A stretch of 64,000 nucleotides of DNA from Podarcis muralis (taxonomy: Eukaryota): the NCBI RefSeq assembly GCF_964188315.1, contig NC_135667.1, positions 26,908,001-26,972,000 of the forward strand. The letters are read 5' to 3'. The position numbers were made by a program, and so were the translations under genes. The notes beneath the pieces are model-generated. The model ran no database searches. It was not told where the DNA came from and worked only from the letters and a program-made list of their open reading frames with translations. Positions 1 through 60,043 of this stretch are shown here, piece after piece. How positions within the stretch are numbered: the stretch's first letter is position 1; each line of letters begins with the position of its first letter.

Positions 1-44
1 GAAAAGCACTGTTAAATCATGCCATCATAGCCCAGTGTCCTGTA

Positions 45-286
45 CAGTGGTACCTCGGGTTACAAACACCTTGGGTTACAAACACTTTGGGTTACAGACT
101 CCGCTAACCCAGAAGTATTACCTCAGGTTAAGAACTTTACCTCAGGATGAGAACAGAAATTGTGCGCTGGTGGCACAGCGGCAGTGAGAGGCCCCATTAG
201 CTAAAGTGGTATCTCAGTTTAAGAACGGTTTCAGGTTAAGAACGGACCTCTGGAATGATTTAAGTTCGTAACCAGAGGTACCACTA
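45..286. mobile_element. Tc1/mariner-type MITE (CAGTGGTACCTC TIR family)
   Basis: TA|CAGTGGTACCTCGGG...GAGGTACCACT. Same family at 11866-12107, 22037-22310 and 48480-48721. Confidence 0.8.
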
Positions 287-4047: not shown

Positions 4048-5451
4048 TTCCAAGAAGGACATTAATTAATCAACCAATCAAGCATGAGGTTCAAAGGAGT
4101 AGAAGCTGGGAGGAACTACAGAAGGAAATATATGAGTAAGAGGAGGCACATGAACAATCTGGGAGCTGGTAAGATACAGTACAGTACAATCTTTTGCCTA
4201 GAAAAGTATGCTAAACCCATACATACACACAAACACACACACACACACACCTTACACTCCATTCTATAGTCCATTCTGCCAACACCATTTCATTCCCAAC
4301 TAATTCTTCTGCATGAGTAGGCCAGGGTTAGGGTTAGGGTCTGAATCTGTAAATTGATTCCATTGAAACATACTGCATTTTAGTGATCCCAAGGCAAGAA
4401 GCTTAGGTTTTTAGGGATGTTGTGGTTTTGGGTCTTGGTTTGGATACTGATCCTCCAGGCACTTGTCTGGATATCATCCATATGTAAAACAGAAGACAGA
4501 GACAAAGACTTCCAAGCATGCTAAAATGTTTATTTGTGAATCAAACAATGTGGGGAAAATCTCAATCTTAGTGCAAACATGCAACCATTCCATCGCTCTC
4601 ATGCGGGCAATAGTGGGCACTGCAGCTCCTCGTGAATCCACAGGTCTAAGCTGCCAGATGTGGTGAGCACGGGGTGGGTGACATCAGAAGTAGTCGAGAA
4701 GAAAAGACAGGAAGCATTTGGGATTTGCTTTGAACATTTATTGATGCAAGAGCAAAGCATATGACTACAGACACCAGGGTCAAGCAGGGGTGAGGGTAGG
4801 GGAAGAGACTTGATTCTAAGGGAAATCTAGCCTGAGAAACCAGTCAGCTGACGAGCAGGTGCTCATTGGCTGGGGCAGGAGCAAAGGGTGAAGAGCGCCC
4901 TCCACACTCTGTCTGTGTCCAGACTGTGAGTGCCCATCCACTGGCTGGTGGGCGGGGACGGGCCATGGAAGGTGCTCTTCACCCCCACACCCCACCCATG
5001 CCTAGCGCACAGGGGCCAACAATCAGTGGGTGGGAGCGGGGTGACCCCGGAGGTGAAGAACATCCTCTGCACTGACCCAGGGGACTCGTGCACCGGGCAC
5101 ATGCCTAGTTTGCACCTCCCAAGATTCTGTGCCCAGGGCCAGGGCCCCCCTTGTCATCATCCCCCCCCACACACACTAGGCCACTGACTGTGGGTCCTCA
5201 TGACTGCCCAGTGCTCCAAAGTGAAGGGAATACCAGAAGCAGCGAGGAAGATAAGAATATATTGTGGTGTGCTCTGAACAATTATTTATTGAACAGAATG
5301 GCAGAGAACTAAATAAACAACAAAAGATAACATATAACATGCAATGTTCAATCAACTAAGTCTGGGATTGGAGGAGGTACCTTGCTTATCTGGGCAATAT
5401 ATAGCCCAGGAGGCCAAGTGGCAAATATCAGGTGCCACAGCTGTTCTCCCA

Positions 5452-6058
5452 CTACCTTTCTGTCTCTACCTCATCGCCTAAGCAGGGGTTTCTGTCACCC
5501 GACTGGTTGTCATCGAAACATTTAATGCAGCCTCTGTTGCTACTGTAGCACCGGAATAGGGGGGCACCCTGGATGTGTTCCCAAGCCCCCACCACAGCCT
5601 CATGCTCTTTCACTGTATCCTTCACGTAAACAGTCTCAAAAACAAAAGCCCTGGAATCCTCACTGTATCTGTTAAAAAGGGGGTTGACCATCTGGACAAT
5701 GTTTCTCGCATCACTCTCATTAAGGCAACGTTCTACACAAGGAGATAATTTGCTAAAGAAGATCAGGCAACTATTTTGGTCTTTATTGGATAGGATCCTT
5801 TCTACAGGGCTATTCTGGCCTCCAGTCAGCAAGCGCCATTCCGCGTGCTCTTTACTACGGGTAAATCTTGGCCTAGCTGCAATGACATCTCCTATTGGCT
5901 TTGGGACATATATTCCATTCCTGTGGTCAAGAGCATTCTTCATCTGCTGCATTTTGCTCCTGGGCAAAACTGTCTCCAAGATCGTTGGTGTAGGTTCTAT
6001 GCAGCATGCATGATCCAGTCTTATAGCCACAGCATAATGGATGTTTTTAATGCCATAC
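5452..6058 (-). CDS. SNAD-like secreted AID/APOBEC-type deaminase, locus 1: intact catalytic terminal exon only
   Basis: ORF 5452-6144 contains HAEWRLL...IFFSKLSPCVERC and a C-terminal Cys cluster. Acceptor ttcctAG|G at 6059-6060 has the same phase as loci 2 and 3. AATAAA at 5290-5285. No homologue of exons 1-2 was seen between 6060 and 7470. Confidence 0.75.
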
Positions 6059-7648
6059 CTAGGAATGAGCACCAAAAAATGATGGGAATGAGTGGCACTG
6101 AATGAGCAAAAACTAACATTGAGTATTCCAAACTGAACTTTCATGTTTGGCAGCTGAATAGAAAGGCATTGTTAGAGGGAAGGATTTTTTTTTATTGGGA
6201 TGTGATGGTTGTGATGACTGATAAACAAATTCTAACTGGCATCTGCTAATATACCAGGACAGAGATGGGTTTTACAACAAAGATTCTCAAAAAATTAAGT
6301 GAGGTTTAGTTAGCGTCACGGCTGTTACTGGGCAGGAAAACAATATTGTGGTTTTTTTATTTTTTAAAAAAGTTATCCTGCAACGAGCAGATAGTCTTGC
6401 CAACAAACTATTATATGCAATATGTGTATTTTTACATCTCCATTATGTCTGGGTGTGCAGTGTGCTTCCAACAACTCTGTGAGGTAGGTTAGGCTGCAAG
6501 TTGATTCAGTTCCCAGAGCTATAAAGGTACACATGACATGCTTACAACATTATTTGTGGCATATCAGGAGTGTGGAAGCAAAAGTTGATGCCTATAGTGC
6601 AAGCACTAAAGATTGAGAACAACATTGAGAACAACAACATATGTTATTATAATAATACATTCTTTCAGCATAACCTTCCAAAATCCACACACATATTGGC
6701 ATTCCCACCACATGTGGAAATAGGAGGCAAAACAGAAGTCAAGGGTGCTTTTCTTAATATTTGCAAAACAACTGCTGGTTAGTTTATCAGTAGGGCTGAA
6801 TCAGTTGGGAAGGAGGCTTTTATGCTCACAAATGCTAATTAAGAACCCACAGGTGTGTGTATGTGTGGGCAGCCAGTTTATGTCAACAATTTCTTCCTCT
6901 GTGCCCTTGCAAGAGCTTGTGCTTATTTTATAATGACCTGTTGAGTTAAGCTAAGGGGTTTAGGGACATGCTCTGAATTCCAGATCAACCAAGCACCCCG
7001 CCAACAATAGTCCCAGGGCTCCTCTTCCTTGACCTAGTCTTTCAGATCAAGACATCACAATCAGTATCAAACTGTATTTTGGTCACAGACCAGCATAAGA
7101 TAAAACCATATTTCAATGAATGTCCATCATGGAAGCGCAGAATCTAGCAACTGAGGATATAACATCTGGATTTTCAGAGACATCGCAATGTTGCAATGAA
7201 TTCTCCTTAACTTAGGTTGCTTCTCCAGGCTGCAGCAAATTGTCCTTTGGGCTTTTAAGTTTTATGTCAGCTGTGGGCACTGGATTGTATTGTAACCTTG
7301 AATTCTCAAACACCCATGGGCATGGGCATGTTAACAGCCCCAATGTGGACACTACAGCCCCACATGACTTTGCACATCTCTTCTGTAGGCGTGGGTGATT
7401 ATTCACACTATAGGGTACAGCAGAGGAAGAAGAAGCAAACAGACAAGAAGCTTTTGTGATATGCTCCAAAGATTTTATTGATTCAACAGCAAAGCAAAGG
7501 ACTACAAAGATCATATGTAATGCTCAATCTTGAGAAAACAAGAATATGGGAATGAGGAAGGGGTGACTTTGGTTCTTAGGCCAGCTGGCAAAATGCTAAG
7601 TGCCACAACTGCAATCCCTAGGTGGCACTACTCTAGCATTGGCTTTCC

Positions 7649-10600
7649 CTAATTGGCCAAGCAGGGACTGCCGTTATCAAATTGGTCATGGTTAAAACAT
7701 TTGATGCAGGCTCTATTACCTGCATAGCACCGAAATAGTGGGGCATTCTGGATGCGTTGCCAGGCCCTCAACACAACCTTATCTTCTCTTTCTGCATCCC
7801 TTGCGTAAATGGACTCAAAAACAAAAGCCCTGGCATCTTCATTGAACCTGTTAAAAAGGGGGATGACCACCTGTACAATGTTTCTCATGCTATTCTCATT
7901 GAGACATCGGTTCACACAGGGGGATAATTTGCTAAAGAAGATCAGGCAACTATTTTGGTCCTTATTGGCTAGGATCCTTTCTACTGGGCTATTCTGGCCT
8001 CCGTTCAGTAAGCGCCATTCAGCATGCACTGCTGAATGTGTCAGAAACATTGGCCTGGCTGCAACAACATCCCCTATCAGATGTGGGTTATACATTCCAT
8101 TTGGCCGCATAATCTTCCTTTTCATCTGAATCATTTCGTGTCTAGGTAAAGCAGCCTGTAAATTCCGCCGTGTAGGATTTCTGCAGTATGTGTTATCCAG
8201 TCTTACAGCCACAGCATAATGGTTATAGGGGAGGCCAAACCTAAGAAAAACCAAAGGAAAGCTGAGAATGAGTGGTGCTGAACTATTCCAAACCAGGTTC
8301 CTCCTTTTGGCCCATGTTGGCTTGATTTTTTATTATAGTCTCAGATGCAGTCATTTGAATGGAGAGGCAGAGAAGTTCCAGTTCTACTGCAATATCTATG
8401 ATGACCTATTTATAGATAGAAGCCACAACTTAATGTTACAGCAGATAGCCAGTGGTTTTTTTGGGGGGGATGGGACGTCAATAACCCAAGATGATGGAGT
8501 TTATCATGTTAATTGGAATTAGATTTGCTAAGCAAAACCAGGAGTGCCATGAGAGCCAGACCAGTGGGTGCAGATCAGGGGTTCCATGCATCCTAGAGGG
8601 GGAATACCCTTTTCCTTTAAATACTGTGCTAGTAAAAGCACCATATTTGCTTGCAAAAGAAGAAGACTCCCAGCACATCAGCACTTTCCAGGACACCCAT
8701 ATGACTATGTGCTGCATAATCCCACGGGCGTCCCAGGAAGTGAAGCCAGACATTGTGCTGCTCTGAGTGCACAAGGTTTTTTAAAAATAAAGACCACCTC
8801 AGCTATGGCACCGCTAATGTGTTTGGGGCACACTGGCTGAGGCTTGTAGCCAGCAAGGCCTGCATAATGCCCAGTTAGTTCCTTCCCAAATCACCCTGTT
8901 TCTACTGCAGTGCCCTTTCTCCCAGAGGTAGGATGGTGGAGGAATGCGATTCAGTCCACATTTAAAGGTGAACCTACCAAATTTTCACTTTCCAAAATAG
9001 TTTGAAAACCAAAATAAGCCCCCCCCCCCCGAAATTCACACTTCTCCAAATTATGCATTGTACTTTTCGAGCAAAGTAATTTGCACAAATGACCATTGAG
9101 ATTGCTACAGCCCATTAAAGGGCAGCTTTGTTTTCATGAACTTGGGGGATAAGTGCGTTAAACAGGTTTTCTAGGAAGTGAAAAGACCTCACTGCTAAAC
9201 CCCCAATAGAAAGCAGAAAGGCAAGAAAGGGTATAGGTGTAAAACAGATGGGAAATGTTCGACTTCATTGCTATGAGAGTTTGGAGGACCTGTTCTGAAA
9301 GGAGAAGAAAATGACCATTACAACGTTAGAAGTACTATATAAATGGAAGAACCACTAACCTTTTAAAGTGCTGTGGAATTTAGGTATGCCTTCAGTGTTT
9401 ACTGTTATGTCCTACCCATATAAGAACAGATTATTTCCTTAACAAGTTCATTTTGAAGTGGATATCTAACTTAAGAGGGTGATTGGAGGAGAAAGTTAGT
9501 TCCATAGGAGGGGATTATTGTTTTTGTTTGTTATTATGGTGTACATTTTTGTGGTTTTATATTGAAACCTGCCCTGTGGTCCTTCCATGAAGGACAGAAT
9601 AGAAATTTCATTAATTAATTAATTATGCATATATTATGGTACAGTATGCATAAAAATGCATGTACATTGTAAAAATAACATTAAAATCATTGTATTAGGG
9701 GATTTTCTTTTTGCAAAAATGTGTATGTTAGGAAAAACTGCATAAAAATATGTGAATATAAATTTGCGCTAAATGCTGGTGATTTTTCTTGGAAATATGG
9801 AAAACTGAAGAGTGGAAAGATGAGAACCAGAAATAAACCTGCTCACCCATCCCTATGCAGTGCTTCCCTCTACAGGCATCTTACTGTACAAGTTTTTATG
9901 TGCCTTGCAATATTCACAGTCATAATGATATTGCCTTCCCCACATCTTCACCCTAATAGCACTTAAAGATGACAAAATGTGAAAGCACGCATGCCAGAAC
10001 AAAACCACATGGGCAGACCTTTGAAAGCAAACATATAACACACACACATTTCCCCTCTGCACAAATATACATACACAGACAGAATCTTATTCATTTATCT
10101 TAGGCCACCTTGTAGCAGCATCAGCATCAAGGGAAGCTCATAACATGAAGCAAAGCAATCTCCTCCATGTTGTATGAAATAATCAAAACGTAAATTATTA
10201 AGTGCTCGCTTCGGCAGCACATATACTAAAATGTAAATTATTATGAGTAGGAAAGCAAAATGCTTTATTTGGCCAGAATACCAACATTCTTGCTTGTTTT
10301 AGTCCCATGATTTTGTTTTGAGGGGTTTTTCGAAATGTGTTGAACACTTGCTTGGAAAGCCCCAGAAAAATCCAAAACATTACTCACTCTCTGATGTAGT
10401 CAATGATTGCCTTCAGCTTGTCTGGATCTATAGACCCAAAGGCTCCACTTGTCAAACACAGCAGGAAAGTCACACTCAACAGGCTGAAACCCAATCGACT
10501 TCTGGACACCTGTCAGAAGAAAACAAAAAGAGAGGGCACTCAGAGTAGCGTCATTGGCTAGGTGTTTCCAGCCACTCTGCTCCACCCCCTGCCTTTGGAA

Positions 10601-11336
10601 GGGTCATAGGACGCTGCTGCCTGAAAGGTGACTGTCTTTGGGAAGCTGAGAGTCCAGAAAATTGATCTAACTGGCTAGCAGTAGTGGGTGGAGACCCTGA
10701 GACTGGTAGAGGTTGCCAGAGCTAGACTGCAGAATCTAGGCAGTACCGTTCAGATAGGGGTGTAGCTGGACCATCAGCCCAAACTGATAGAAGACACTCC
10801 ATGCCAATGAGGCTTCTTATGACTCAAGTGACAAGAGTGGCTCCAGAAATACCCCAAGCTATGCATTTCCAGTTTTATACACCTACGCCTTAATTAGCTA
10901 CATGAGGGTGCAATGCAATCTGGATATAAGATATGCCTATCAGATATTTTCCCAGTTCTAAAACGATTACATTGTACTTTAATTTTATTACTGTAAATCT
11001 TGAATATTTGTCTGAATTTAATCGTCTTACATCTTGTGAGCTGTTAATTGTTTTGAGCTGATTGGAGCTCATCCTTGTTGTCAGGAAAGCAGCACATAGA
11101 TATTAAATCAAAATCCTAATGTTGTAGAATTATACTGTTGTTGTTTTCTTTTCAATGAAGTTCAATGAAGCATTATCATCATTCCTACTTGTTTTGTAAG
11201 TAGGAATGATGATAATGTCTTATTGGTATGAATGTTATATTTATTCATAACATGTATTATATGCCACAATAATAACAGAAGCTTGATAGAGGCATATCAG
11301 ATAAATTGTAACAGAGTTACTCACTGTCGGCTCCAT
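7649..11336 (-). CDS. SNAD-like secreted deaminase, locus 2 (complete, 241 aa)
   Basis: Exon 1 11336-11325 (ctaccATGGAGCCGACA|GTGAGT); exon 2 10509-10388 (VSRSRLGFSLLSVTFLLCLTSGAFG-SIDPDKLKAIIDYIR, |GTGAGT, phase 2); exon 3 8240-7649 (ttcttAG|G, HAEWRLL...SPCVNRC). Hydrophobic signal peptide present. AATAAA at 7479-7474. Confidence 0.85.
10202..10232 (+). pseudogene. Retroposed 5' fragment of U6 snRNA with 11-bp target-site duplication
   Basis: GTGCTCGCTTCGGCAGCACATATACTAAAAT is the first 31 nt of U6. Flanked by GTAAATTATTA at 10190-10200 and 10233-10243. Confidence 0.9.
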
Positions 11337-11406
11337 GGTAGGAAAGTAGCTTGTCTCCCAGCCAAAGACGGTCTTCCTCCCACTTACAGCAATAATTCAC
11401 CAGCTC

Positions 11407-11414
11407 TTTATATA
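11407..11414 (-). promoter_or_regulatory. TATA box of deaminase locus 2
   Basis: TATATAAA ~70 bp upstream of the Kozak ATG at 11336. CCAAT motifs at ~11469 and ~11523. Conserved in locus 3 (18486-18479). Confidence 0.65.
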
Positions 11415-11585
11415 GGTATTCTGTTTCTCTTAGGAAAGGTTGGATACCCCTCCTTGTATATAGAACTGCCAATCACAAAACAGAGAGGTGGTCAGGGTTT
11501 TTTTAAAAAAAAACACACCTGACCAATTACAGGAAGAAATTGTCACGAGGCAGGGAGGATCTGCAACTCTTTCTGTTCTTGGTAA

Positions 11586-11605
11586 GAGAACTGAAAGAGA
11601 AACCC
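11586..11605 (-). promoter_or_regulatory. ISRE/IRF-E-like element upstream of locus 2
   Basis: Minus strand GGTTTCTCTTTCAGTTCTC (plus strand GAAAGAGAAA at 11593-11602) matches GAAANNGAAA, ~180 bp upstream of the TATA box. Confidence 0.45.
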
Positions 11606-11865
11606 TATGGTCACATCATCCCTCTGCAACGTGTAATGACTGTGAAGGGAACCCAAATATTGTTTGCTAAGCTCTTTGGACTGCAAATACATTTGCATCA
11701 GCATTTTGGGAAGATTCTTGGTACTGAAACCAGCACCATTACAAAACAGTGCATCAGTTGCTGACTTGCCTCTCTACAGCAGTGTACTTCAGCCTTGGGT
11801 CCCTGGATGTTGCTGGACTACAACTCCCATTACCCCTAGGCTTCTTGGTCAATGGTCAGCGATTA

Positions 11866-12107
11866 CAGTGGTACCTCAGGTTATATACGCTTCAGGTTAC
11901 ATACGTTTCAGGTTACAGACTCCGCTAGCCCAGAAATAGTGCTTCAGGTTAAGAACTTTGCTTCAGAATGAGAACAGAAATTTTGCTCTGGCAGCGCGGC
12001 GGCAGCAGGAGGCCCCATTAGCTAAAGTGGTGCTTCAGGTTAAGAACAGTTTCAGGTTAAGTACGGGCCTCCGGAACAAATTAAGTACTTAACCCGAGGT
12101 ACCACTG
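11866..12107. mobile_element. Tc1/mariner-type MITE
   Basis: TA|CAGTGGTACCTC...GAGGTACCACTG|TA. Confidence 0.85.
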
Positions 12108-12139
12108 TACATCAATACCAGCAAGAAAGAAAAATGGGA

Positions 12140-12310
12140 GGCATCTAAGGAAACTAGTGTGGATGCATAAGGAGCTTTCAGATGAGCTGAGAGTTAAGAA
12201 GGGGATGTATAAGAAATGGAAGAAAGGGAAAATCACAAGGAGCCAACAGTTGCACGGGGAAGTCAGGTGATAGTTCTTTCACTTGTGCAGTAAACCACTT
12301 GATGTTTAAG
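12140..12310 (+). mobile_element. Degenerate CR1 LINE ORF2 fragment
   Basis: GAGCTGAGAGTTAAGAAGGGGATGTATAAGAAATGGAAG resembles the CR1 ORF2 'ELRxKKxMYKKWK' region. Confidence 0.4.
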
Positions 12311-13039
12311 GCATGAGATTCACATCCTCTCTTGTGTGGTTGTGTATTCCCACAACTCACGCATATGGAAGTCCTACCACAGAGATAGGGAACCTGTAGT
12401 CCTCTAGATGTTGTTAGACTACAACTTCCATAATCCCTGACCATTGGCTGTCCTGGCTGAGGCTGATAAGAGCTGTAGCCCAATGATAGTGATACAGTCA
12501 TAGGTTCCCTATGCCTGTCCTATCACATTACTTCTGTGCTCTGTACTTTGTAATGTAAAAACCTGTGCTCCTACACAAACAAGTAGAATTGGTCCGTGCA
12601 AGATTCTGCCTCAGTATCCATGCCACAATCCTGGCCTCCACTCCATCCAACCAAGGATTTCACCAAACATCCACTTGTAACCGGAAATGTTGTGGATCAG
12701 CAAAATCCCTCTCACTACTTGGCAGGATGATAGCCTGCTTACCTTATCATGATATGTACACTGTGCTAAGTTACTGTTTCTTAGGTAGTCATCTGTACTC
12801 AGCCCAGCATAAGCCTTCTTCTGCAACAATCATTCATTCACGCACTCAGTGGCATAGCTTCATGCACCTCTTCTACTGCCTGCTAGAGCCTTCTGAAGTC
12901 TCTAGCACATCTCATCATCCATACATAAAGTTCAACAAAAGATTCACATTGTATTGGGGGGGGACCCTTTTCAGCCCAAGGGTCATTGCTTTTCAGGGGT
13001 CACATCCCAGTGGTACCTATGGGTGTGGCTATAATAATA

Positions 13040-13385
13040 TAATAATAATAATTTATTATTTATACCCCGCCCATCTGGCTGAGTTTCCCCAGCCACTCTG
13101 GGCGGCTCCCAATCAGTGTTAAAAACAGTACAGCATTACATATTAAAAACTTCCCTGAACAGGGCTGCCTTAAGATGTCTTCTGAATATCAGGTAATTAT
13201 TTATCTCTTTGACATCTAATGGGAGGGCGTTCCACAGGGCGGGCGCCACTACCGAGAAGGCCCTCTGTCTGGTTCCCTGTAGCCTCACTTCTCGCAATGA
13301 GGGAACCGCCAGAAGGCCCTCGGCGCTGGATCTCAGTGTCCGGGCTGAATGATGGGGGTGGAGACGCTCCTTCAGGTATAGAGAC
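13040..13385 (-). mobile_element. L2 LINE 3' end
   Basis: ORF 13136-13420 ...RQRAFSVVAPALWNALP...[14 protein letters not shown], with an (ATA)n-like tail. Confidence 0.8.
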
Positions 13386-14821
13386 AACAGCGGGCGGAGC
13401 AATGGATGTGACTCTTCCATGCGGACAGTAAGCTACATTTCAGCCCAGCAAAAGCCAGAGGTTTCTACTTCCCACATAACATCTCTTCATCCTCTATCAA
13501 GCAAACAAGAGGCATTGTCACAGTTCAAGGAAGCACTCCAAAAAGGCCAAAGCATTTGAGAGGGGATGAAGGAGGGACTGGGTAGAGTCCCATTGGCCAA
13601 ATAGAGAGGCTTGAAGGGTCTGGGGTTCCCCATCCCTGTCTCAGGGTATTTATCTATGACAGCTGGGGTGGGGGAGGAATTTGTACATTTTTTGCACTTT
13701 CCAAAACAGTATGTGAGCCAAAGCACAGCTATCTTTTGAACTTTGTGTTTGTCCTAATTTTGTGATGCAGTTTTCCAGTCAAACAATGCTTACAAAGATT
13801 ATTAAGGAAGGTATGCATAAAAATGAAAGTCTGTGTGTGGGGGATGTAAAACACAATAGCAGTCAATTACAACATTCCTAGAGTGTACATGTTTAGACAT
13901 GGGGAGGGATGTTTGTCCAGCCAGCAGGTAAACTTCCTGTTTCCCTCTGGGCTGGGACAGACTTCCTCCGCATGTGACTAGAGGTGGGTGTGGCCTCACC
14001 TGTGCAGGTAATGATAAAAGCACAGGGCAGGGGCAGCCATCTCTCTCTCTTACTTCTCTTCCTTTGAACAAGCAACATCTACTGAGTGAAAGATGCCCTC
14101 TTGGCTCCCAGCCAAGAGAGGACAAAGGGACTATCTTCTTATAAGATAGATTCCAAATGTATGTTACTTCATTAAGCCTAAGTCTGCCTTCTGGGATCTG
14201 ATTGTGAACAGATTGTGGGTAAACTCTTTTTATCCTTTTGTAAAGGACTGTGTCGTGTCTTCTATTTTGAGAGGGAATAAGGGGAAATTACCAGAATAGT
14301 CATTACACAGGCTAAAGTGAGCCTGAGCAAATGCTGCCGTTGCAAACAAAATAAAGGGGAATGTTTTACTCTGCTGATATTGGAAACTTGTTAACACAAG
14401 TTGGATAAGGATATAATCAGACAATATATCCTCTCCTGCATTCCTGAACATTCCCACAGTGTGTTTGTGTAAAAATTGCTTGCAGCAGTGTGCGCATTTC
14501 TCAAAACTGCATATAAAAATGTGCTTATTGTGAGACATCTATACTAATATGCTGGTGAATTTTCATGAGTTTTCAAGTGTATACTTAGGCTTGTGGTGCT
14601 AATACCAGAGACAGCAAAAAACAAGAAGCTATTTTGGTAAGATCTCAATATTTATTCATTCATCAGCAAAGCAGTAAAGTATATGCATCATATACAAAGG
14701 TTAAGTTGGTTAAAGCAGCGGAAGCCTTGACTCTATTGGCAATCTACACAGGAGCCCACTTGACAATCATGTGGTCCCACAACTACCTGCCATAAGGTGC
14801 ATCATCACCATCTTTCTGGCT

Positions 14822-17800
14822 CTAATCAAGTAAGCATGGACTGTCAGCGTTTTGGTTGTTGTCAAAGCATTGAATACAGCCTCGGTTGTCATTGTAGCAC
14901 CGGAATAGGGGGGAATTCCGGATCCTTTCCCAGGCCTTCACCACAACCTCCTTCTCCTCCTGTGTGTCCCTCCGATAAACAGTCTCAAAAACAAAAGCCC
15001 TGGCATCTTCATTGTACCTGTTAAAAAGAGGGTTCACCATCTGTACAATGTTTCTCATGTCATTCTCATTGAGACATTGGTTCACACAGGGGGAGAATTT
15101 GCTAAAGAAGATCAGGCAACTATTTTGGTCCTTATTGGCTAGGATCCTTTCTACTGGGCTATTCTGGCCTCCAGTCAGTAAGCACCATTCAGCATGCACT
15201 GCTGAATTTCCCAGAAACATTGGCCTGGCTGCAACAACATCCCCTATCTGACCTGGGTTATACATTCCATTTTCCTGCATAATAGCCGTATGCATCTGAG
15301 CCATTTTGTCTGTAGGTAAAGCAGTCTCTAAATTCTGCCGTGTAGGATTTCTGCAGTATGTGTTATCCAGTCTTACAGCCACAGCATAATGGTTATAGGG
15401 GAGGCCATACCTAAGAAAAAACAAAGGAAAGCTGAGAATGAGTGATGCTGAACTATTCCAAACCAGGTTCCTCCTTTTGGCCCATGTTGGCTTGATTTTT
15501 TATTACAGTCTCAGTTGCAGTCATTTGAATGGAGAGGCAGAGAAGTTCCAGTTCTACTGCAATATCTATGATGACCTATTTATAGATAGAAGCCACAACT
15601 TAATGTTACAGCAGATAGCCAGGGGTTTTTTGGGGGGATGGGACGTCAATAACCCAAGATGATGGAGTTTATGATGTTAATTGGAATTAGATTTGCTAAG
15701 CAAAACCAGGAGTGCCATGAGAGCCAGACCAGTGGGTGCAGATCACGGGTTCCATACATCCTAGAGGGGGAATACCCTTTTCTTTTAAATACTGTGCTAG
15801 TAAAAGCACCATATTTGCTTGCAACAGAAGAAGGCTCTCAGCACATCAGCATTTTCCAGGACACCCATATGACTATGTGCTGCATAATCCCATGGGCATC
15901 CCAGGAAGTGAAGCCAGACATTGTGCTGCTCTGAGTGCACAAGGTTTTTTAAAAATAAAGACCACCTCAGCTATGGCACCGCTAATGTGTTTGGGGCACA
16001 CTGGCTGAGGCTTGTAGCCAGCAGGGTCTGCATAATGCCCAGTTAGTTCCTTCCCAAATCACCCTGTTTCTCCTGCAGTGCCCTTTCTCCCAGAGGTAGG
16101 ATGGTGGAGGAATGCGATTCAGTCCACATTTAAAGGTGAACCTACCAAATTTTCACTTTCCAAAATAGTTTGAAAACCAAAATAAGCCCCCCCCAAAAAA
16201 AAAATTCACACTTCTCCAAATTATGCAATGTACTTCTTGAGCAAGGGACGCAGGTGGCGCTGTGGGTTAAACCACAGAGCCTAGGACTTGCCGATCGGAA
16301 GGTTGGCGGTTTGAATCCCCGCGACGGGGTGAGCGCCCATTGTTCGTTCCCAGCTCCTGCAAACCTAGTGGTTCGAAAGCACATCAAAGTGCAAGTAGAT
16401 AAATAGGTACCGCTGCAGCGGAAAGGTGAACGGCCTTTCCAAAACAATTTGAAAAGCAAAATAAGCCCCCCCCCCCGAAATTCACACTTCTCCAAATTAT
16501 GCATTGTACTTTTCGAGCAAAGTAATTTGCACAAATGACCATTGACTTTGCTACAGCCCATTAAAGGACAGCTTTGTTTTCATGAACTTGGGGGATAAGT
16601 GTGTTAACAGGTTTTCTAGGAAGTGAAAAGACCTCACTGCTAAAGCCCCAATAGAAAGCAGAAAGACAAGAAAGGCTATAGGTGTAAAACCGATGGGAAA
16701 TGTTCGACTTCATTGCTATGAGAGTTTGGAGGACCTGTTCTGAAAGCAGAAGAAAATGACCATTACAACGTTAGAAGTACTATATAAATGGAAGAACCAC
16801 TAACCTTTTAAAGTGCTGTAGAACTTAGGTATGCCTTCAGTGTTTACTGTTATGTCCTACCCATATAAGAACAAATTACTTCCTTAACAAGCTCATTTGG
16901 AAATGGATATCTAACTTAAGAGGGTGATTGGAGGTGAAAGTTAGTTCCATAGGAGGGGATTATTGTTTTTGTTTGTTATTATGGTGTATATTTTTGTGTT
17001 TTTATAACCTGCCCTGTGGTCCTTGGATGAAGGACAGAATAGAAATTTCATTAATTAATTAATTAATTAATTATGCATATATTAAGGTACAGTATGCATA
17101 AAAATGCATGTACGTTGTAAAAATAACATAAAAATCATTGTCTTAGGGAGGAATTTTTTGCAAAAATGTGTATGTTAGGAAAAACTGCATAAAAACTTGT
17201 GAATATAAATTTCCACTAAATGCTGGTGATTTTTCTTGGAAATGTGGAAAACTGAAGAGTGGAAAGATGAGAACCTGAAATAAACCTGCTCACCCATCCT
17301 TATGCAGTGCTTCCCTGTACAGGCATCTCAATGTACAAGTTTTTATGTACCTTGCAATATTCACAGTCATAATGATATTGCCTTCAATTTGTTTTGAGGG
17401 GTTTTTCGAAATGTGTTGAACACTTGCTTGGAAAGCCCCAGAAAAATCCAAAACATTACTCACTCTCTGATGTAGTCAATGATTGCCTTCAAGTTGTTTG
17501 GATCTATAGACCCAAAGGCTCCACTTGTCAAACACAGCAGGAATGTCACACTCAACAGGCTGAAACCCAACCGACTTCTGGACACCTGTCAGAAGAAAAC
17601 AAAAAGAGAGGGCACTCAGAGTAGCGTCATTGGCTAGGTGTTTCCAGCCACTCTGCTCCACCCCCTGCCTTTGGAAGGGTCATAGGAAGCTGCTGCCTGA
17701 ATGGTGACTGTCTTTGGGAAGCTGAGAGTCCAGAAAATTGATCTAACTGGCAAGCAGTAGTGGGTGGAGACCCTGAGACTGGTAGAGGTTGCCAGAACTA

Positions 17801-18408
17801 GACTGCAGAAGCTAGGCTATACCGTTCAGATAGGGGTGTAGCTGGACCATCAGCCCAAACTGATAGAAGACACTCCATGCCAATGAGGCTTTTTATGACT
17901 CAAGTGACAAGAGTGGCTCCAGAAATATCCCCAAGCTATGCATTTCCAGTTTCATGCACCTACTCCTTAATTAGCTACATGAGGGTGCAATGCTATCTGG
18001 ATATAAGATATACCTATCATATATTTTCTCAGTTCTAAAACGATTACATTGTACTTTAATTTTATTACTGTCAATCTTGAATATTTGTCTTTGAATTTAA
18101 TCGTCTTACATCTTGTGAGCTGTTAATTGTTTTGAGCTGCTTGGAGCTCATCCTTGTTGTCAGGAAAGCAGCACACAGATATTAAATCAAAATCCTAATG
18201 TTGTAGAATTATACTGTTGTTGTTGTTTTCTTTTCAATGAAGCATTTTCATCATTCCTACTTGTTTTGTAAGTAGGAATGATGATAATGTCTTATTGGTA
18301 TGAATGTTATATTTATTAATAACATGTATTATATGCCACAATAATAACAGAAGCTTGATAGAGGCATATCAGATAAATTCTAACAGAGTTACTCACTGTC
18401 GGCTCCAT
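14822..18408 (-). CDS. SNAD-like secreted deaminase, locus 3 (complete, 240 aa)
   Basis: Exon 1 18408-18397; exon 2 17585-17464; exon 3 15410-14822 (HAEWCLL...SPCVNQC). All GT-AG and in phase. AATAAA at 14656-14651. Confidence 0.85.
16245..16433 (+). mobile_element. Sauria SINE 5' half inserted in intron 2 of deaminase locus 3
   Basis: GGGACGCAGGTGGCGCTGTGGGTTAAACCACAGAGCC... tRNA-like head. Absent at the homologous site in locus 2 (~9075). Confidence 0.85.
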
Positions 18409-18478
18409 GGTAGGAAAGTAGCTTGTCTCCCAGCCAAAGATGGTCTTCCTCCCACTTACAGCAATAATTCACCAGCTC

Positions 18479-18486
18479 TTTATATA
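18479..18486 (-). promoter_or_regulatory. TATA box of deaminase locus 3
   Basis: TATATAAA at the position homologous to the locus 2 TATA box. Confidence 0.65.
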
Positions 18487-18837
18487 GGTATTCTGTTTCT
18501 CTTAGGAAAGGTTGGATACCCCTCCTTGTATATAGAACTGCCAATCACAAAACAGAGAGTTGGTCAGGTTTTTTTTTAAAAAAAAACACCTGACCAATTA
18601 CAGGAAGAAATTGTCACGAGGCAGGGAGGATCTGCAACTCTTTCTGTTCTTGGTAAGAGAAATGATAGAGAAACCCTATGGTCACATCATCCCTCTGCAA
18701 CGTGTAATGACTGTGAAGGGAACCCAAATATTGTTTGCTAAGCTCTTTGGACTGCAAATACATTTGCATCAGCATTTTGGGAAGATTCTTGGTACTGAAA
18801 CCAGCACCATTACAAAACAGTGCATCAGTTGCTGACT

Positions 18838-19145
18838 AGGGGGGAATTCCGGATCCTTTCTCAGGCCCCCACCACAACCTCCTTCTGTGTGTCCTTCCCA
18901 TAAACAGTCTCAAAAACAAAAGCCCTGAAATCTTGAGGGAACCTGATAAAAAGGGGGCTGGCCATCTCCACAATCCAGTTCTCGTCTTCCTTGTTGAGAC
19001 AGTGGTCTGTACAAGGAGATAATTTGCTAAAGAATATCAGACAACCATTTTTACCCTTATTTTCCAAGATCCTTTCTACTGGACTATTCTGGCCTCCAAT
19101 CAGCAGGCGCCATTCAGCATGTTCTGTATCCTTTTTCATAGCCAT
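18838..19145 (-). pseudogene. SNAD-like deaminase, locus 4: truncated pseudogene fragment
   Basis: HAEWRLL...SPCTDHC is retained. TGG>TGA occurs at the conserved AW (stop at 18863-18861), homology breaks off at ~18838 before the FRCY/CIxC motifs, and there is an in-frame stop shortly upstream of the ORF start. Confidence 0.8.
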
Positions 19146-19459
19146 AGTATAAATAGAAATTCAGTACATCTCACAATAGTGGAGAAGACTGTGACTAGTT
19201 GATCTCTGGGCTTGCTCACTCTGCTGTCCAAGTTCTAAGTATTGATGGGCAACTTCCAAGCCATTGCTTGCCCTTCTCGTGGTTCTTTATCTTTAAATAA
19301 TACTTGGACCAAACTGCCCTACAATTAAAGGCTGCCTTCAGACAGATAACTGTTTATAACCTTCCCCTCCAAACCTCCAAATCTGAAGCTGCCAGCCCGC
19401 TCCCCTTTAAATCCAGTGGGAGAAAAGGGAGAAAGAAAGTGTGTGTGTGCGCGCGCGCG

Positions 19460-20895
19460 CAAAAAACACATACAACAAAAACCATAATAACGCTAATAAC
19501 ACAATCTGACAATTCAGATTTAAACACTGATATACCTATGACTACACCTTTTTAACAATATTTCCCCACCTCTCCTCCCCCTACTTCCCACCACTGTCTG
19601 CCTTATCACTTAAATATTCCTTCCAGGTTTCTTCATATTTATCCACTCTTAATTTGCGTTGACATGCAATTCATTCGTATGTAGCTAGTCTGTCCATATT
19701 ATCCATCCATGTGCTCAATAGAATCTTTTTGCGGCTCTTCCAATTCATCAAAACAAGTTTTTTTGCTTCTAATATGGCATGGTACATCCTTTTTTTTTTT
19801 ACCCCTTGTAATCTCCCACGTTTCCGGAATATAATTTAGAATTAAATTCAATTCCCCTAAATAACAATTTATTTTTATTACTCTTGCTATAAATGTCCTC
19901 ACCTCGCACCAAAATGATCTTATCATCGGGCAATTAATCATCATATGTACTAGTTCGCATTTTTACTCCCACATCTCCAGCAGTTGTCTGCACTTGTTAT
20001 TTTCTTCTGGTATAGTTTTGCTGGAGTCCAGTGGACTCTGAATATTATTTTCTGCTGAATAAGTCTTAGTCTTAGATCCATAGTGGCTATCTCTGTTGAT
20101 TTTATACTTGACTCCCATATATCATTTGTTATCTGTACCCCTAACTCTTCGTTTTTGTCTATCATATTCTAAATCATATTTCTTCCTGTTGAGTAGGGTT
20201 TTATATAGTGTAAGTGTAGAGCTCTTTGTTTTTGTTGCAGAGATTAAATCTTGTAGCAGCATGGGTGTTTCCGATGCTTCTAGAGCGTCAGGGCCAAACT
20301 GCCTTTCCAACATATGTTTCAATTGGATGTATTGCCATTGTGTTTCACTGGTTAATCCATACTTTACTTATATTCCACAAATTTGTAATTTTCATCAATT
20401 AATTGATTCAATGTCAAAATACCTTTTTTCATCCAATTTTGCCAAATTATTACTTGATTTCCAATTTTTAATTTTGGGTTGGCCCATATTGTTAATTTCT
20501 CCTTATTATTTTTATTTATATTCATTCAAATTTTTATAGGTGCTTTCATAGTCTCCAGGATAATAGGATATTTCATAAATTTGGAGCCGAGTTTAGTCCA
20601 CCCTACAAGAGGTTCAAAGAAACTACATTCGAGAGTAGCCCAACTGGGATTCCTGCTAGCTCTCCAATCGTTAGTCTTACTCAGCATGTAGGCCTGGTGA
20701 TATAGTTCCAGATCTGGGAGACCAAAGCCACCTTCCTTAGTTGGAAGTTGCATTTTATGTAGTGATATTTTTAGTGGCTTTGTACCCCATAGGCACGATC
20801 TAAATAGTTGATTTGTTTTTTGGAAGTAAAATTTGGGAACATGTATTGGTAATCCTCTAAGAATGTATAAAAGCTTTGGAACGACATTCATTTTG
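19460..20895 (-). mobile_element. L1-type LINE ORF2 3' part, frameshifted
   Basis: ORFs 20526-20891 (MNVVPKLLY...KEGGFGLPDLELYHQA), 19950-20165 (IIFRVHWTPAKL...CWRC) and 19699-19944. Confidence 0.85.
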
Positions 20896-22036
20896 AGGGC
20901 ATTAATCTTCTTCTTTTATAGAGCCATTCCACCTCTCTTGGGGGGGGGGAGCCTCTCCTACAGTTTCAAATTGCAAAACAGGAATGAGTTGAGTTCCTAG
21001 GAAGGATCTGAAGCACGTCACTACATGTAAAAAGAATGGTGGAACAGGAACTGTGTGATAAAACATAAAAGACAGTTGACAATCAAGGAGGGTGGCCAAT
21101 TACTAATGCAAATTCCACCAAAGAAAAGGAACTGGTATTTCTGGAGAAGTGTATAAATTGCCACGTGTCGTCTGCTTAACCTTGAGGTGATCTTTCGTTT
21201 TGTTTTTTGGCATGGAGCCTATTCATTCCATGGAAGTCAGGGAGAGTGAAAGATCCGAGGTCATGTATACAGTCAAATATTATGACAGACTCCTTCTGTA
21301 AACAGCTTTGTGGGATTTCTAAGGAAATTGTGTAAGTGGTGCTTTTCTCTTTCTTCCTCTGTCTGCACTGTGGCAACAGGGGGCAATCTGGGGGCAGAAG
21401 TTCACAGCCCCACTTAACAGAATGAGCTGGAGGTCACAAACTGCAGAAGGGCTGGGTTGTGGCATTCTCTTTCTTTTGGTGTAAAGATTTTTATTAAAGT
21501 TTTTCATAATACAGTAAGATATAGAAAACTAATGTATTTTTTTATTTTAAAAAAGCTACAAAAAGTACAAATAGAATAAGGTGTCCTCTCTTAAAGGTAG
21601 TTCTTAACGCTTGCCACCCACAGAAGGTAGTAGCCACTTTCTCCTCCTAGCCTCTCACCCTGGAAGACCAACATTTTCCTGCCTCCCATCCAGGGTCTCT
21701 CCATCAACCATCTATCACTCCTGGACCCTAATAAAAGCCCTGAGTAGAGGATGTCAGAGAAGAGAGAGAATGAAGAAAAGAGAAAAGAAAGAGGAAGAAT
21801 CAGGAAGAAGAAAGAAAAGAGAGGCAGGGGGAGAGAGAAAGAGAAAGGGAAAGGAAACAATTTAAAATTAAAAAAGGGACTTCTTATTTTCCATCTGCCG
21901 GTTGCATTAAAACAAAATGATAACATACAAATCTCCTCCACTTTCTGTTAAACAATATTTCTTTGAAGTCCAATTGTCTCAAAATCATTCATTTCCTTGT
22001 CCACAAATGAAAAGATACATTGCATCAACAGCAGTA

Positions 22037-22310
22037 CAGTGGTACCTCAGGTTAAGTACTTAATTCGTTCTGGAGATCCGTTCTTAAACTGAAACTGTTC
22101 TTAACCTGAAGCACCACTTTAGCTAATGGGGCCTCCTGCTGCTGCCGCACCGATGGAGCACGATTTCTGTTCTCATCCTGAAGCAAAGTTCTTAACCTGA
22201 AGCACTATTTCTGGGTTAGCAGAGTCTGTAACCTGAAGCGTATGTAACCTGAAGCGTATGTAACCTGAAGCGTATGTAACCTGAAGCGTATGTAACCCAA
22301 GGTACCACTG
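22037..22310. mobile_element. Tc1/mariner-type MITE with an internal 17-bp tandem expansion
   Basis: TIRs with TA flanks. GTAACCTGAAGCGTAT(G) repeated ~4 times at ~22228-22295. Confidence 0.85.
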
Positions 22311-44330: not shown

Positions 44331-45500
44331 AGGCTACACTAGGATTTTGATTATTTGGGTTATGAAGGGAGAATGCAAGCTGCAGAGTAATTCCTGGGCT
44401 AGCCTATGCAAAATGACCTGGCTCAACTGGGGCCATTAAGGAACAATAGAGGGCCATTGAGAGACATTGCAAGACAAGAGAAGAATCCCTGCCTCCTGCC
44501 CTGAGGTGTAAACAGAGACTGGGTTTGGAAGGTGGCCAGGGTAACTGGGTGTAAGCTGACAGGAAAATAAAGTTTTGATTTAGGTAGGTAGACATGTTGG
44601 TCTGACACAGTCGAAATATAAAAATAATAAAAAATAAATAAAAATAAATTGTGCAGTAGCACCTTAGAGACCAACTTAGTGCCTGCTGAGCCAGGAATGA
44701 GTCCACTGAGTTGGCGATCATCCTAAATTGCTCATCTCAGTGGATCTACACTTGGAGGAACATACCAAAGCTTCCTCATACTGAGCCAAGCCATTAGTCC
44801 ACCTAGATCAGGGTTGTCTACACTATGATTTCAGCCCTAGCTAGAGATGCCAGGGATTGAACTTGGGACCTTCTGCATGTAACGAAGAAGCTGTACCATT
44901 GACCTATGACCCTTTCCAAAAGGAAATCCATGAATGTCGAAAGTGTGTTTTCTTTCTCCAGAGATGGGAAATTTTTCATCGTAGTCTCTCTCAGACCTGT
45001 CCTACAGCCTTTTTTTTTTTTTTTTACTGAAGGGCTATAGGCTGAAGTCTTTAATGGCAAGTTATGCTTCCAGACAACGCTATCCAGTGCATAGTAAATA
45101 CTTCCTTTCATGAATGACAAACAGGTGTTCTCCAGCAATGCCATAGAGGCTTTGAGCTGAGTCCCCTGTAATTACCATAAGGACGGGAGTTAACTCTGGA
45201 ACTTGCAGAGTCCTCTCTGGAAATCTAGTGACTAATAAGAAAAGAAATAATATGCTTTGTGAAGGGCGGTATAAATACTCCCATGCACTCCAGTACCAGG
45301 GTCTCAGGAGCAACAAGGCTCCATCAGGCTGATTTCTGGTACTCTGTGTTTGATAATGATGGATTTGGTCTTATCTGCAAACAGAATGATCATTTGGGTC
45401 AGTCAAAACAGTCTGGTGCAATTACAGGGATTATAAAGATTGAGATTTCCCTGTTTGCATCTCCTGCAACCTGTGTTCATATCATACATTTGTACTCAGG

Positions 45501-59142: not shown

Positions 59143-60043
59143 AGTTATGCAACCCCTGACCCATCTGAAAGCAATCCTGTATAGGGAAGCTGTACAAACA
59201 AAGCCTCTCCCTTATCAGTCCAGGAAGGCTTAGTGATGGATGGCCTTGTCAGTTCCGAGTGGAGCGAGTGGAGACGGGATGGAAGATCTGGGTCTTATCT
59301 TGTAGGTTGTAAATATCCTGGCCACTCTGACGCACAGACTTTGCCTGTCAGACCTGTCAGCCCCCACTCCCGGAGACGGCGCCAGGGGAAACTCCTATAG
59401 CTGGGTGACCTTCTTGCCCTAAGATAAGCACACAGGAACCGGAATATCTGTTTATGCTCAAGGATGCTCAAGGAGATCAACTTACTCATGAGGCAGGATT
59501 CCTGGGGAAGGGGCAGAGGGGGTCTGGAGGGAATATATACTGTATGAAAATTCTCTTTCAGTGTGCTTGCTGTGAACTGACCACACAAGTGCCTTTCTGG
59601 CTGCTCTGGAGAGCAGAAATAAAAAACTCTTTCTCTGAACCAACCTCAGTGTCTTCTGACTCCTTCCTCCCTCTCCGGAAGCAACGCTCACCCAACCAAT
59701 CGGTAAAGTCTAAGAAGGCTACACTAGGATTTTGATTATTTGGGTTATGAAGGGAGAATGCAAGCTGCAGAGTAATTCCTGGGCTAGCCTATGCAAAATG
59801 ACCTGGCTCAACTGGGGCCATTAAGGAACAATAGAGGGCCATTGAGAGACATTGCAAGACAAGAGAAGAATCCCTGCCTCCTGCCCTGAGGTGTAAACAG
59901 AGACTGGGTTTGGAAGGTGGCCAGGGTAACTGGGTGTAAGCTGACAGGAAAATAAAGTTTTGATTCAGGTAGGTAGACATGTTGGTCTGACACAGTCGAA
60001 ATATCAAAATAATAAAAAAAAAATTAAAAAAAAATGTGCAGTA

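What the first reader, a model, noticed from the sequence alone, without database searches (positions are those of the whole stretch)
5452..10509. Intact 'orphan' catalytic exon: possible alternative last-exon cassette sharing one signal peptide
Seen: locus 1 has an open ~200-codon exon with all catalytic residues, a phase-compatible AG|G acceptor (6059-6060) and its own AATAAA. I find no homologue of exon 1, exon 2 or the promoter in the 1.4 kb before the locus 2 poly(A) site. Inference: exon 2 (donor 10387) could splice to either 8240 or 6058, so one promoter and leader would produce two divergent secreted enzymes. The alternative is a recently orphaned exon.
Basis: partly seen in the sequence, partly recalled or inferred. 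Interest (0 to 1): 0.72.

Follow-up and report, generated by a model that had tools for sequence, protein, structure and literature searches.

The report
Second deaminase exon sharing one leader
In a wall-lizard cluster of secreted DNA/RNA-editing (SNAD1) enzyme genes, an intact catalytic exon with no signal-peptide exon of its own is kept by selection. It is most likely used as an alternative last exon of the gene upstream, so one promoter and leader would make two different secreted deaminases.

Summary
Window 6058-5452 (minus strand) is an open 201-codon SNAD1 exon (Pfam PF18744, E 8e-47). It has HAEW, SPCxxC and the four-cysteine cluster, an AG|G acceptor in the same phase as its paralogues, and its own AATAAA (5290-5285). 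Sensitive searches find no leader or promoter homologue in 6059-7648.

It is not a recent orphan. The same leaderless exon lies 2.2-2.4 kb downstream of the B-type gene in Podarcis raffonei, P. lilfordi and Zootoca vivipara. It shows dN/dS 0.23-0.34 and no indels, whereas the neighbouring B exon shows dN/dS 1.3-3.

The proposed splice is already annotated in two congeners: P. raffonei LOC128399648 isoform X1 (246 aa) beside X2 (241 aa), and a 246/241 aa pair in P. lilfordi. The P. lilfordi pipeline adds isoforms from RNA-seq and Iso-Seq. I checked those models exon by exon: exon 1, exon 2, then the A exon, all GT-AG.

Exon 2 also supplies the first 15 positions of the SNAD1 domain, which fold as a confident N-terminal helix.

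This genome's own annotation calls the exon an intronless 230-aa gene, and that start is not conserved in Zootoca. Lacerta agilis has lost the exon.

This is an undiscussed but already annotated case of a known gene architecture.

The parts
5452..6058 (-). Catalytic exon A of SNAD1: 1 base completing a split Glu codon, 201 codons, then TAG. It has no leader exon of its own. It holds HAEW (5847-5836), SPCVERC (5745-5725) and the Cys cluster (5556-5479).
   Evidence: Pfam PF18744 at E 8e-47, profile positions 16-212 of 213. 97.5-98.5% aa identity to the P. raffonei and P. lilfordi orthologues and 92% to Zootoca. dN/dS 0.23-0.34.
6059..6102 (-). 3' splice site of exon A: AG at 6060-6059 with a 76% pyrimidine tract. 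This stretch is still homologous to the 3' end of the intron before exons B and C.
   Evidence: blastn homology runs to 6102 against 8282 and 15452. Sequences. The acceptor is conserved in four species, while the ORF upstream of it is closed by a 1-bp deletion in Zootoca.
5285..5290 (-). AATAAA poly(A) signal of exon A. The 3'UTR is about 160-190 nt.
   Evidence: Conserved in the three Podarcis species; an AATAAA lies a few bases away in Zootoca.
6103..7648 (-). The stretch between the B stop codon and the A splice region, holding B's 3'UTR and poly(A) site. It contains no leader, exon 1 or promoter homologue. In the A isoform it would be part of a 4.3-kb intron (10387-6059).
   Evidence: About 90% identical to Zootoca, with 13 indel events over 6059-7648.
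7474..7479 (-). AATAAA of gene B (the proximal poly(A) site), followed by a GT/T-rich stretch. Transcription must read through it to reach exon A.
7649..8240 (-). Catalytic exon B, the proximal last exon of LOC114583659 (241-aa product P0007). It evolves fast.
   Evidence: dN/dS 1.3-3.0 against orthologues.
10388..10509 (-). Shared exon 2. It encodes the signal peptide and the first about 16 residues of the mature protein (SIDPDKLKAIIDYIR plus 2 bases of a Glu codon). The donor GTGAGT starts at 10387.
   Evidence: It supplies SNAD1 profile positions 1-15. It is modelled as helix 33-45 at pLDDT about 92.
11325..11336 (-). Coding part of exon 1 of gene B (ATG GAG CCG ACA, donor GTGAGT).
   Evidence: Matches the N-terminus of P0007.
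14825..15410 (-). Catalytic exon C of the upstream duplicate gene. Its own exon 2 is at 17585-17464 (5 differences from B's exon 2) and its exon 1 ATG is at 18408.
18837..19160 (-). Fragment D: a leaderless partial SNAD1 exon (residues about 58-167) with in-frame stops. It shows what a truly orphaned exon looks like in this array.

Best explanation
Exon A (6058-5452) is a conserved alternative 3'-terminal coding exon of the SNAD1 gene whose promoter, exon 1 (11336-11325) and exon 2 (10509-10388) lie upstream.

Proposed mechanism:
1. After exon 2, the transcript can splice to the proximal acceptor (8240) and be cleaved at the B poly(A) site (about 7455). This gives the 241-aa enzyme B.
2. Alternatively, polymerase reads through that site. 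Exon 2 then splices to the distal acceptor (6058), and the RNA ends at A's own AATAAA (5290). This gives a 246-aa enzyme.

Both proteins share the same signal peptide and N-terminal helix. Their deaminase cores are only about 62% identical.

Shown here: the anatomy, the phase compatibility, the absence of any other leader, purifying selection on A, and the annotated orthologous isoforms.

Inferred: that the 10388-to-6058 junction is used in this species; that the product is secreted and active; and that A (slowly evolving) and B (fast evolving) divide labour.
For: 1. The anatomy and phase are as stated.
2. The window holds only two leaders, and both sit in front of B and C. None lies in 6059-7648.
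3. Orthologous loci carry exactly this model. P. raffonei has isoforms X1 (246 aa) and X2 (241 aa) with the same gene start, and P. lilfordi has 246- and 241-aa products with the same start. My exon-by-exon check finds GT-AG junctions and a GA+G split codon. P. lilfordi isoforms derive from PASA, RNA-seq and Iso-Seq. None of the proteomes that paper used as guides is known to contain this form; the old P. muralis model is the 230-aa form.
4. The arrangement 'B-type gene, leaderless A exon, fn2-domain gene' is conserved in Zootoca.
5. A has dN/dS 0.23-0.34 with an excess of synonymous change (P = 3e-4 to 4e-3). It has 0 indels in 607 nt against 13 in 1553 nt of flank. Only 11-15% of neutral simulations stay stop-free.
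6. Exon A alone lacks SNAD1 profile positions 1-15. Leader plus A covers 1-212 and gains about 14 bits. Those residues form a confident helix in the model.
7. The exon keeps the four-cysteine cluster that Krishnan et al. propose forms disulfides in the secreted protein (PMC5889660). That makes sense only with a signal peptide.
8. Elsewhere, every intact exon has its own leader (Tiliqua), and the leaderless pieces are decayed (Hemicordylus and fragment D).
Against:
- No run listed as holding the stretch is on record as RNA.
- No transcript-derived (Logan) protein of the A type is in the protein collection.
- This genome's own annotation, and the older P. muralis one, model A as a separate intronless 230-aa gene. 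Zootoca models give it tiny first exons of their own.
- Whether RNA supports the P. raffonei isoform is inferred from how the NCBI pipeline works. I did not see it.
- Lacerta agilis has lost the exon, so it is dispensable in at least one lacertid.
- Within Podarcis the counts are too small to show constraint: about 3 synonymous against 6 non-synonymous changes.
Confidence: 0.65

Rival explanations
1. A is an independent intronless gene, as annotated in this genome (LOC114582100, 230 aa). Transcription would start shortly upstream of 6144. Translation would start at the ATG at 6144-6142 and run through the 'acceptor' without splicing. The 29 extra residues would perhaps act as a weak signal peptide.
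For: - The ORF 6144-5452 is open in the window and in the three Podarcis species.
- NCBI models it this way in both P. muralis assemblies.
- The extension has a moderately hydrophobic stretch (Kyte-Doolittle 1.4 over 12 residues).
Against: - In Zootoca a 1-bp deletion closes this upstream frame, yet the exon behind the acceptor stays intact and constrained.
- The product would lack SNAD1 profile positions 1-7 and the conserved N-terminal helix.
- Its hydrophobic stretch is much weaker than the real leader's (1.4 against 2.4).
- The 44 nt before the AG are retained intron sequence.
- Such a model is what a gene finder produces when it extends a protein-homology hit to the nearest ATG. This last point is my own inference.
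Confidence: 0.15
2. Exon A is reached only by read-through from gene B and by splicing from assorted cryptic donors downstream of the B poly(A) site, for example near 7365 and 6684. These would give non-secreted or non-coding products. The constraint on A would reflect a non-secreted form or some other role.
For: - The Zootoca models join A to mini first exons. Their homologues lie at about 7390-7365 and 6703-6684 of the window, and their donors are in the right phase.
- The block 6782-6683 is 96% identical to Zootoca, slightly above its surroundings.
Against: - The start codons of both mini exons are not conserved: ACG in Podarcis for one, ATA in P. lilfordi for the other.
- The two Zootoca models disagree with each other.
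- The products lack both the signal peptide and the N-terminal part of the domain, yet keep the cysteine cluster.
Confidence: 0.12
3. Exon A is a recently orphaned, functionless exon (a young pseudogene) that has simply not decayed yet.
For: - It has no leader of its own.
- Lacerta agilis has deleted it.
- Two P. muralis assemblies differ at 8 residues of the exon.
Against: - The same leaderless exon is intact in two genera.
- dN/dS is 0.23-0.34, P down to 3e-4.
- It has no indel, where the flank rate predicts about 5.
- The stop-free chance is 11-15% even before counting indels.
- A forms a well-supported clade (100/98) with a long stem and very short tips.
- The array's real orphan, fragment D, carries stops and is truncated.
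Confidence: 0.05

Closest known systems
Podarcis raffonei LOC128399648 isoforms X1 (XP_053217265.1, 246 aa) and X2 (241 aa), and the P. lilfordi pair CAI5790422.1 (246 aa) with a 241-aa product
   Same: - Orthologous locus with the same order: D fragment, (C), B, A, fn2-domain gene.
- Identical exon-intron logic: exon 1 and exon 2 joined to either the proximal or the distal catalytic exon.
- The A exon is 97.5-98.5% identical in protein.
   Different: - Those are database models in other species.
- In this genome the exon is annotated as a separate 230-aa intronless gene.
- P. lilfordi lacks the B/C duplication.
SNAD1 genes as described in fish and by Krishnan et al. 2018 (PMC5889660; PMC11004436)
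   Same: - Same Pfam family.
- HxE and PCxxC zinc site, four-cysteine cluster, N-terminal signal peptide.
- Lineage-specific tandem expansions and fast evolution.
- Typically a three-exon gene.
   Different: - In the described genes each copy has its own leader. The SNAD1 paper I searched (PMC11004436) has no occurrence of 'splice' or 'isoform'.
- Here one copy has no leader and appears to borrow its neighbour's.
Genes with alternative 3'-terminal coding exons, such as calcitonin/CGRP and secreted versus membrane immunoglobulin heavy chains (from my own knowledge, not tested here)
   Same: - One promoter and common 5' exons.
- The choice between a proximal last exon with its poly(A) site and a distal one yields two proteins.
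   Different: Here the two last exons are paralogues. Each encodes a complete catalytic core of the same enzyme family, so the choice swaps the whole enzyme behind a constant secretion leader.
Mammalian APOBEC3 tandem arrays (from my own knowledge, plus fold matches)
   Same: - Tandemly duplicated AID/APOBEC-like deaminase units.
- Unequal recombination and positive selection on some copies.
   Different: - APOBEC3 proteins are intracellular and each gene has its own promoter.
- Sequence identity is about 10-14%, and fold similarity is only moderate (Z about 7).

Membership tests
SNAD1 (Pfam PF18744, secreted novel AID/APOBEC-like deaminase 1) | Significant match to the family profile above the curated cut-off | tested here: met
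   Exon A scores 160.3 bits (cut-off 25), E 8e-47, over profile positions 16-212 of 213. Orthologous leader+A proteins score 174-175 bits over positions 1-212.
SNAD1 (Pfam PF18744, secreted novel AID/APOBEC-like deaminase 1) | Zinc-deaminase active site: H-x-E and P-C-x-x-C | tested here: met
   HAEW is at 5847-5836 and SPCVERC at 5745-5725. H, E, P and both C are invariant in the 20-sequence alignment.
SNAD1 (Pfam PF18744, secreted novel AID/APOBEC-like deaminase 1) | C-terminal four-cysteine cluster (C, CxxC, C), as described by Krishnan et al. 2018 | tested here: met
   FRC, CIKC and NPCL lie at 5556-5479. The feature is described in PMC5889660.
SNAD1 (Pfam PF18744, secreted novel AID/APOBEC-like deaminase 1) | N-terminal signal peptide | tested here: inconclusive
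   The exon does not encode one, and none lies in 6059-7648. One is present only if the exon is spliced to exon 2 (10509-10388), as in the orthologous models P0025 and P0027.
SNAD1 (Pfam PF18744, secreted novel AID/APOBEC-like deaminase 1) | Cytidine-deaminase-like fold | tested here: met
   AlphaFold2 model of P0025: pLDDT 80.8, pTM 0.79. The best structural matches are almost all zinc deaminases (Rib2 deaminase, APOBEC3G, AID, TadA, ADAT2) at Z 5.7-7.7, rmsd 3.1-4.7 Å, 104-139 residues aligned. The Z-scores are moderate, so this supports membership but does not prove it.
Gene with alternative 3'-terminal coding exons | Two last exons, each with an acceptor in the same phase, its own stop codon and its own poly(A) signal | tested here: met
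   The acceptors at 8240 and 6058 both complete GA+G. Stop codons are at 7651-7649 and 5454-5452. AATAAA hexamers are at 7479-7474 and 5290-5285.
Gene with alternative 3'-terminal coding exons | A single set of upstream exons and one promoter serving both last exons | tested here: met
   No second leader or promoter homologue lies between B and A in the window or in three relatives. This is absence of homology, not proof that no promoter exists there.
Gene with alternative 3'-terminal coding exons | Transcripts carrying each of the two junctions | not testable with these tools
The only support is indirect: annotated isoform pairs in P. raffonei and P. lilfordi.

The most novel reading that the evidence does not exclude
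The locus is a two-module immune effector gene. One promoter, signal peptide and N-terminal helix is coupled to a choice between two deaminase cores: a fast-diversifying one (B, dN/dS above 1) and a conserved one (A, dN/dS about 0.3). The choice would be made by splice-site and poly(A)-site selection, which could be regulated, for example by tissue or infection. The cost of duplication would be reduced to a single exon. If so, borrowing a leader would be a general route by which AID/APOBEC-like arrays gain new enzymes without new promoters.
Probability: 0.3. Interest if true: 0.6.

Novelty: new member of a known kind. Interest (0 to 1): 0.45.

Why it matters
SNADs are the only secreted branch of the AID/APOBEC deaminases, and their targets are unknown. 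A locus where one leader feeds two catalytic cores under opposite selective regimes offers a natural experiment.

- The two proteins are made from the same promoter and are delivered in the same way. Differences in substrate or target should therefore map to the core alone.
- The locus is also a warning for annotation. The same exon is called an intronless gene in P. muralis, a two-exon gene with invented starts in Zootoca, and an isoform in P. raffonei and P. lilfordi. Counts of SNAD genes, and judgements of which are secreted, depend on getting this right.

Tried and rejected
1. Read evidence. The look-up of sequencing runs listed 24 runs. So no reads were laid.
   - One slip: a local blastn inside the sandbox used a query spanning 4500-19500, which includes those places, against four fetched lizard loci. 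I took only block boundaries from it and did not repeat it.
2. I did not build or search a joined window model (exon 1 + exon 2 + exon A). I used the public orthologous isoforms P0025 and P0027 instead, and checked exons one by one.
3. I looked for a hidden leader with blastn (word size 7), Smith-Waterman with shuffled controls, and tblastn (word size 2) using 12 squamate leaders. Nothing rose above noise.
4. I looked for transcript-derived proteins of the A type in the protein collection. There are none; cluster P0001 holds only genome-annotation products.
5. I tested the 230-aa intronless start and the Zootoca mini-exon starts for conservation. None is conserved.
6. I noted a possible in-frame 78-nt cassette exon at about 6761-6684. 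I have no evidence for it beyond slightly raised conservation, so I make no claim.
7. I looked for the same architecture in Tiliqua and Hemicordylus. It is not there.
8. Foldseek against the PDB gave only weak hits (E about 0.01). The wider VIA search gave deaminases at Z of at most 7.7.
Full report
**What is there**

The window comes from a lacertid lizard. Its proteins are identical to Podarcis muralis RefSeq products on a 59.6-Mb record.

On the minus strand lies a tandem array of SNAD1 genes (secreted novel AID/APOBEC-like deaminase 1, Pfam PF18744). tblastn finds four catalytic exons:
- A: 6058-5452.
- B: 8240-7649.
- C: 15410-14825.
- A truncated fragment D, 19160-18837, with in-frame stops.

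B and C each have an exon 1 encoding four codons (ATG at 11336 and at 18408). Each also has a 122-nt exon 2, at 10509-10388 and 17585-17464. Exon 2 encodes the signal peptide and the first about 16 residues of the mature protein.

The B and C units (7682-11766 and 14852-18837) are duplicates 92-97% identical in DNA.

**Checking the observation**

- The acceptor AG is at 6060-6059, and the exon starts at 6058.
- Exon 2 ends with GA, and the G at 6058 or at 8240 completes a Glu codon.
- There are 201 open codons, then TAG at 5454-5452.
- HAEW, SPCVERC and the C / CxxC / C cluster are all present.
- AATAAA is at 5290-5285. The B gene's AATAAA is at 7479-7474.
- The 44 nt before the A acceptor are still homologous to the intron ends before B and C. 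So the duplication that made A carried the splice acceptor with it.

No leader, exon 1 or promoter homologue exists between B and A.
- blastn with word size 7 finds leader and promoter homologues only in front of B and C.
- Smith-Waterman scores against 6059-7648 equal the shuffled controls.
- tblastn with 12 squamate SNAD1 leaders gives noise only.

**Relatives**

I fetched the orthologous loci of P. raffonei (L001), P. lilfordi (L004), Zootoca vivipara (L003), Lacerta agilis (L002), Hemicordylus (L006) and Tiliqua (L007).

- Podarcis and Zootoca share the order 'B-type gene with leader, leaderless A exon 2.2-2.4 kb downstream, fn2-domain gene'.
- The A exon is 97.5-98.5% identical in protein among the Podarcis species and 92% identical to Zootoca. 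B is only 75-87% identical.
- Nei-Gojobori estimates give dN/dS 0.23-0.34 for A against Zootoca (13-14 synonymous and 13-17 non-synonymous changes). For B, the values against orthologues are 1.3-3.0.
- The excess of synonymous change in A is significant (binomial P = 3e-4 to 4e-3). A has no indel in 607 nt, while the non-coding stretch beside it has 13 in 1553 aligned nt. Only 11-15% of neutral simulations at that divergence stay free of stops.
- In a maximum-likelihood tree, A forms a clade with 100/98 support, a long stem and very short tips.
- In Tiliqua every catalytic exon has its own leader. In Hemicordylus the leaderless pieces are decayed, as is fragment D here.
- Lacerta agilis lacks A. 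The equivalent of window 6940-5181 is replaced there by 374 nt made of two copies of an interspersed repeat.

So A is old, has been leaderless since at least the Podarcis-Zootoca ancestor, is constrained, and has nonetheless been lost once.

**How it is expressed**

- XP_053217265.1, 'LOC128399648 isoform X1' of P. raffonei (246 aa).
- CAI5790422.1 of P. lilfordi (246 aa).

At both loci a 241-aa product (B) and the 246-aa product share the same gene start. I checked the models exon by exon. They consist of exon 1, exon 2 and the A exon, with GT-AG at every junction, the split codon GA+G, and the B exon skipped.

The P. lilfordi paper states that alternative forms were added by PASA updates. 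Those used assemblies of Illumina RNA-seq and PacBio Iso-Seq from five tissues (PMC10214862). This is indirect but transcript-based support.

Other annotations model A differently.
- This genome's own annotation, and the older P. muralis one, call A an intronless 230-aa gene starting at the ATG at 6144.
- Zootoca models attach 7- or 10-codon first exons.
- None of these starts is conserved. A 1-bp deletion closes the 6144 frame in Zootoca. The mini-exon ATGs read ACG in Podarcis and ATA in P. lilfordi.
- I read these models as gene-finder completions of a homology hit. That is my inference.

**A structural argument**

Exon A alone matches SNAD1 profile positions 16-212 (160 bits). Leader plus A matches positions 1-212 (174-175 bits). 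In an AlphaFold2 model of P0025 (pLDDT 80.8), the exon-2-encoded residues 33-45 form a helix at pLDDT about 92, and residues 1-29 are disordered as expected of a signal peptide.

The model's best structural matches are zinc deaminases (Rib2 deaminase, APOBEC3G, AID, TadA) at Z 5.7-7.7. So the exon needs exon 2 both for secretion and for a complete domain.

**Most likely mechanism**

After exon 2, the transcript takes one of two routes.
1. It splices to 8240 and is cleaved after 7474. This gives B.
2. It reads through, splices to 6058 and is cleaved after 5285. This gives A.

The outcome is two secreted deaminases with a common leader and cores about 62% identical. One is conserved and one is diversifying. 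I put this at 0.65. The rivals are:
- an independent intronless gene (0.15);
- only read-through or cryptic-exon products (0.12);
- a functionless orphan (0.05).

**What I could not do**

One local sandbox blastn had a query spanning them; I disclose that as a slip. I did not build or search a joined window model of exon 1 + exon 2 + exon A.

**Comparison with what is known**

The protein is a plain member of SNAD1 (Krishnan et al. 2018, PMC5889660). The gene architecture, alternative 3'-terminal coding exons, is a known kind, and this instance is already present as database isoforms in two sister species.

The SNAD1 paper I searched has no occurrence of 'splice' or 'isoform' (PMC11004436). 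Fish SNAD1 genes are described there as separate genes of two to four exons. Hence my verdict: a new member of a known kind, of moderate interest. Two earlier notes of this scan on the same stretch (a tandem SNAD array; fast catalytic exons beside near-identical leaders) agree with what I found.

Noticed in passing
window 7649-8240 and 14825-15410, compared with L001-L004: Catalytic exons B and C evolve very fast. For B, dN/dS is 3.0 against P. raffonei, 1.8 against P. lilfordi, 2.0 against Lacerta and 1.3 against Zootoca. The leader, the introns and the promoter of the B and C units stay 93-98% identical. This suggests diversifying selection on the core, gene conversion of the rest, or both.
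   Followed up: partly
window 14806-14852 and 18834-19160; L004 8122-9220: Gene C looks like a recombinant. In P. lilfordi, fragment D and the 3' end and flank of 'C' are contiguous as one broken exon, and there is no C gene. In P. muralis and P. raffonei a copy of the B unit sits between them. So the B/C duplication seems to have arisen by unequal exchange between catalytic exons after the split from P. lilfordi.
   Followed up: partly
L002 14541-14915, corresponding to window 6940-5181: Lacerta agilis has lost exon A together with its 3'UTR. The gap is filled by two copies of an interspersed repeat that also occurs at window 59966-60117 and 44582-44680.
   Followed up: partly
window 7440-7398, against L003: Just downstream of the B poly(A) site, Zootoca carries a long (CTT)n run and an inserted element of about 130 nt that Podarcis lacks. 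The region between the two last exons therefore tolerates insertions.
   Followed up: no
window 6761-6684: This block is 96% identical to Zootoca, above its neighbours. It is flanked by AG and GT and is open in the phase that would keep exon 2 and exon A in frame (78 nt). It could be a cassette exon or a coincidence. The Zootoca gene model uses its donor.
   Followed up: no
window 5452-6144 (P0001) against P0028: The two P. muralis assemblies differ at 8 residues within exon A, plus 1 in the upstream ORF. That is more than the 3 differences between this window and P. raffonei. The cause could be deep P. muralis lineages, relaxed constraint on that branch, or assembly quality.
   Followed up: no
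window 43-285, 11864-12110, 22034-22268, 48478-48724: Four copies of an interspersed repeat of about 240 nt, 81-91% identical and in both orientations. One copy sits just upstream of the B/C duplication boundary at 11766.
   Followed up: no
I did not examine them further.
   Followed up: no
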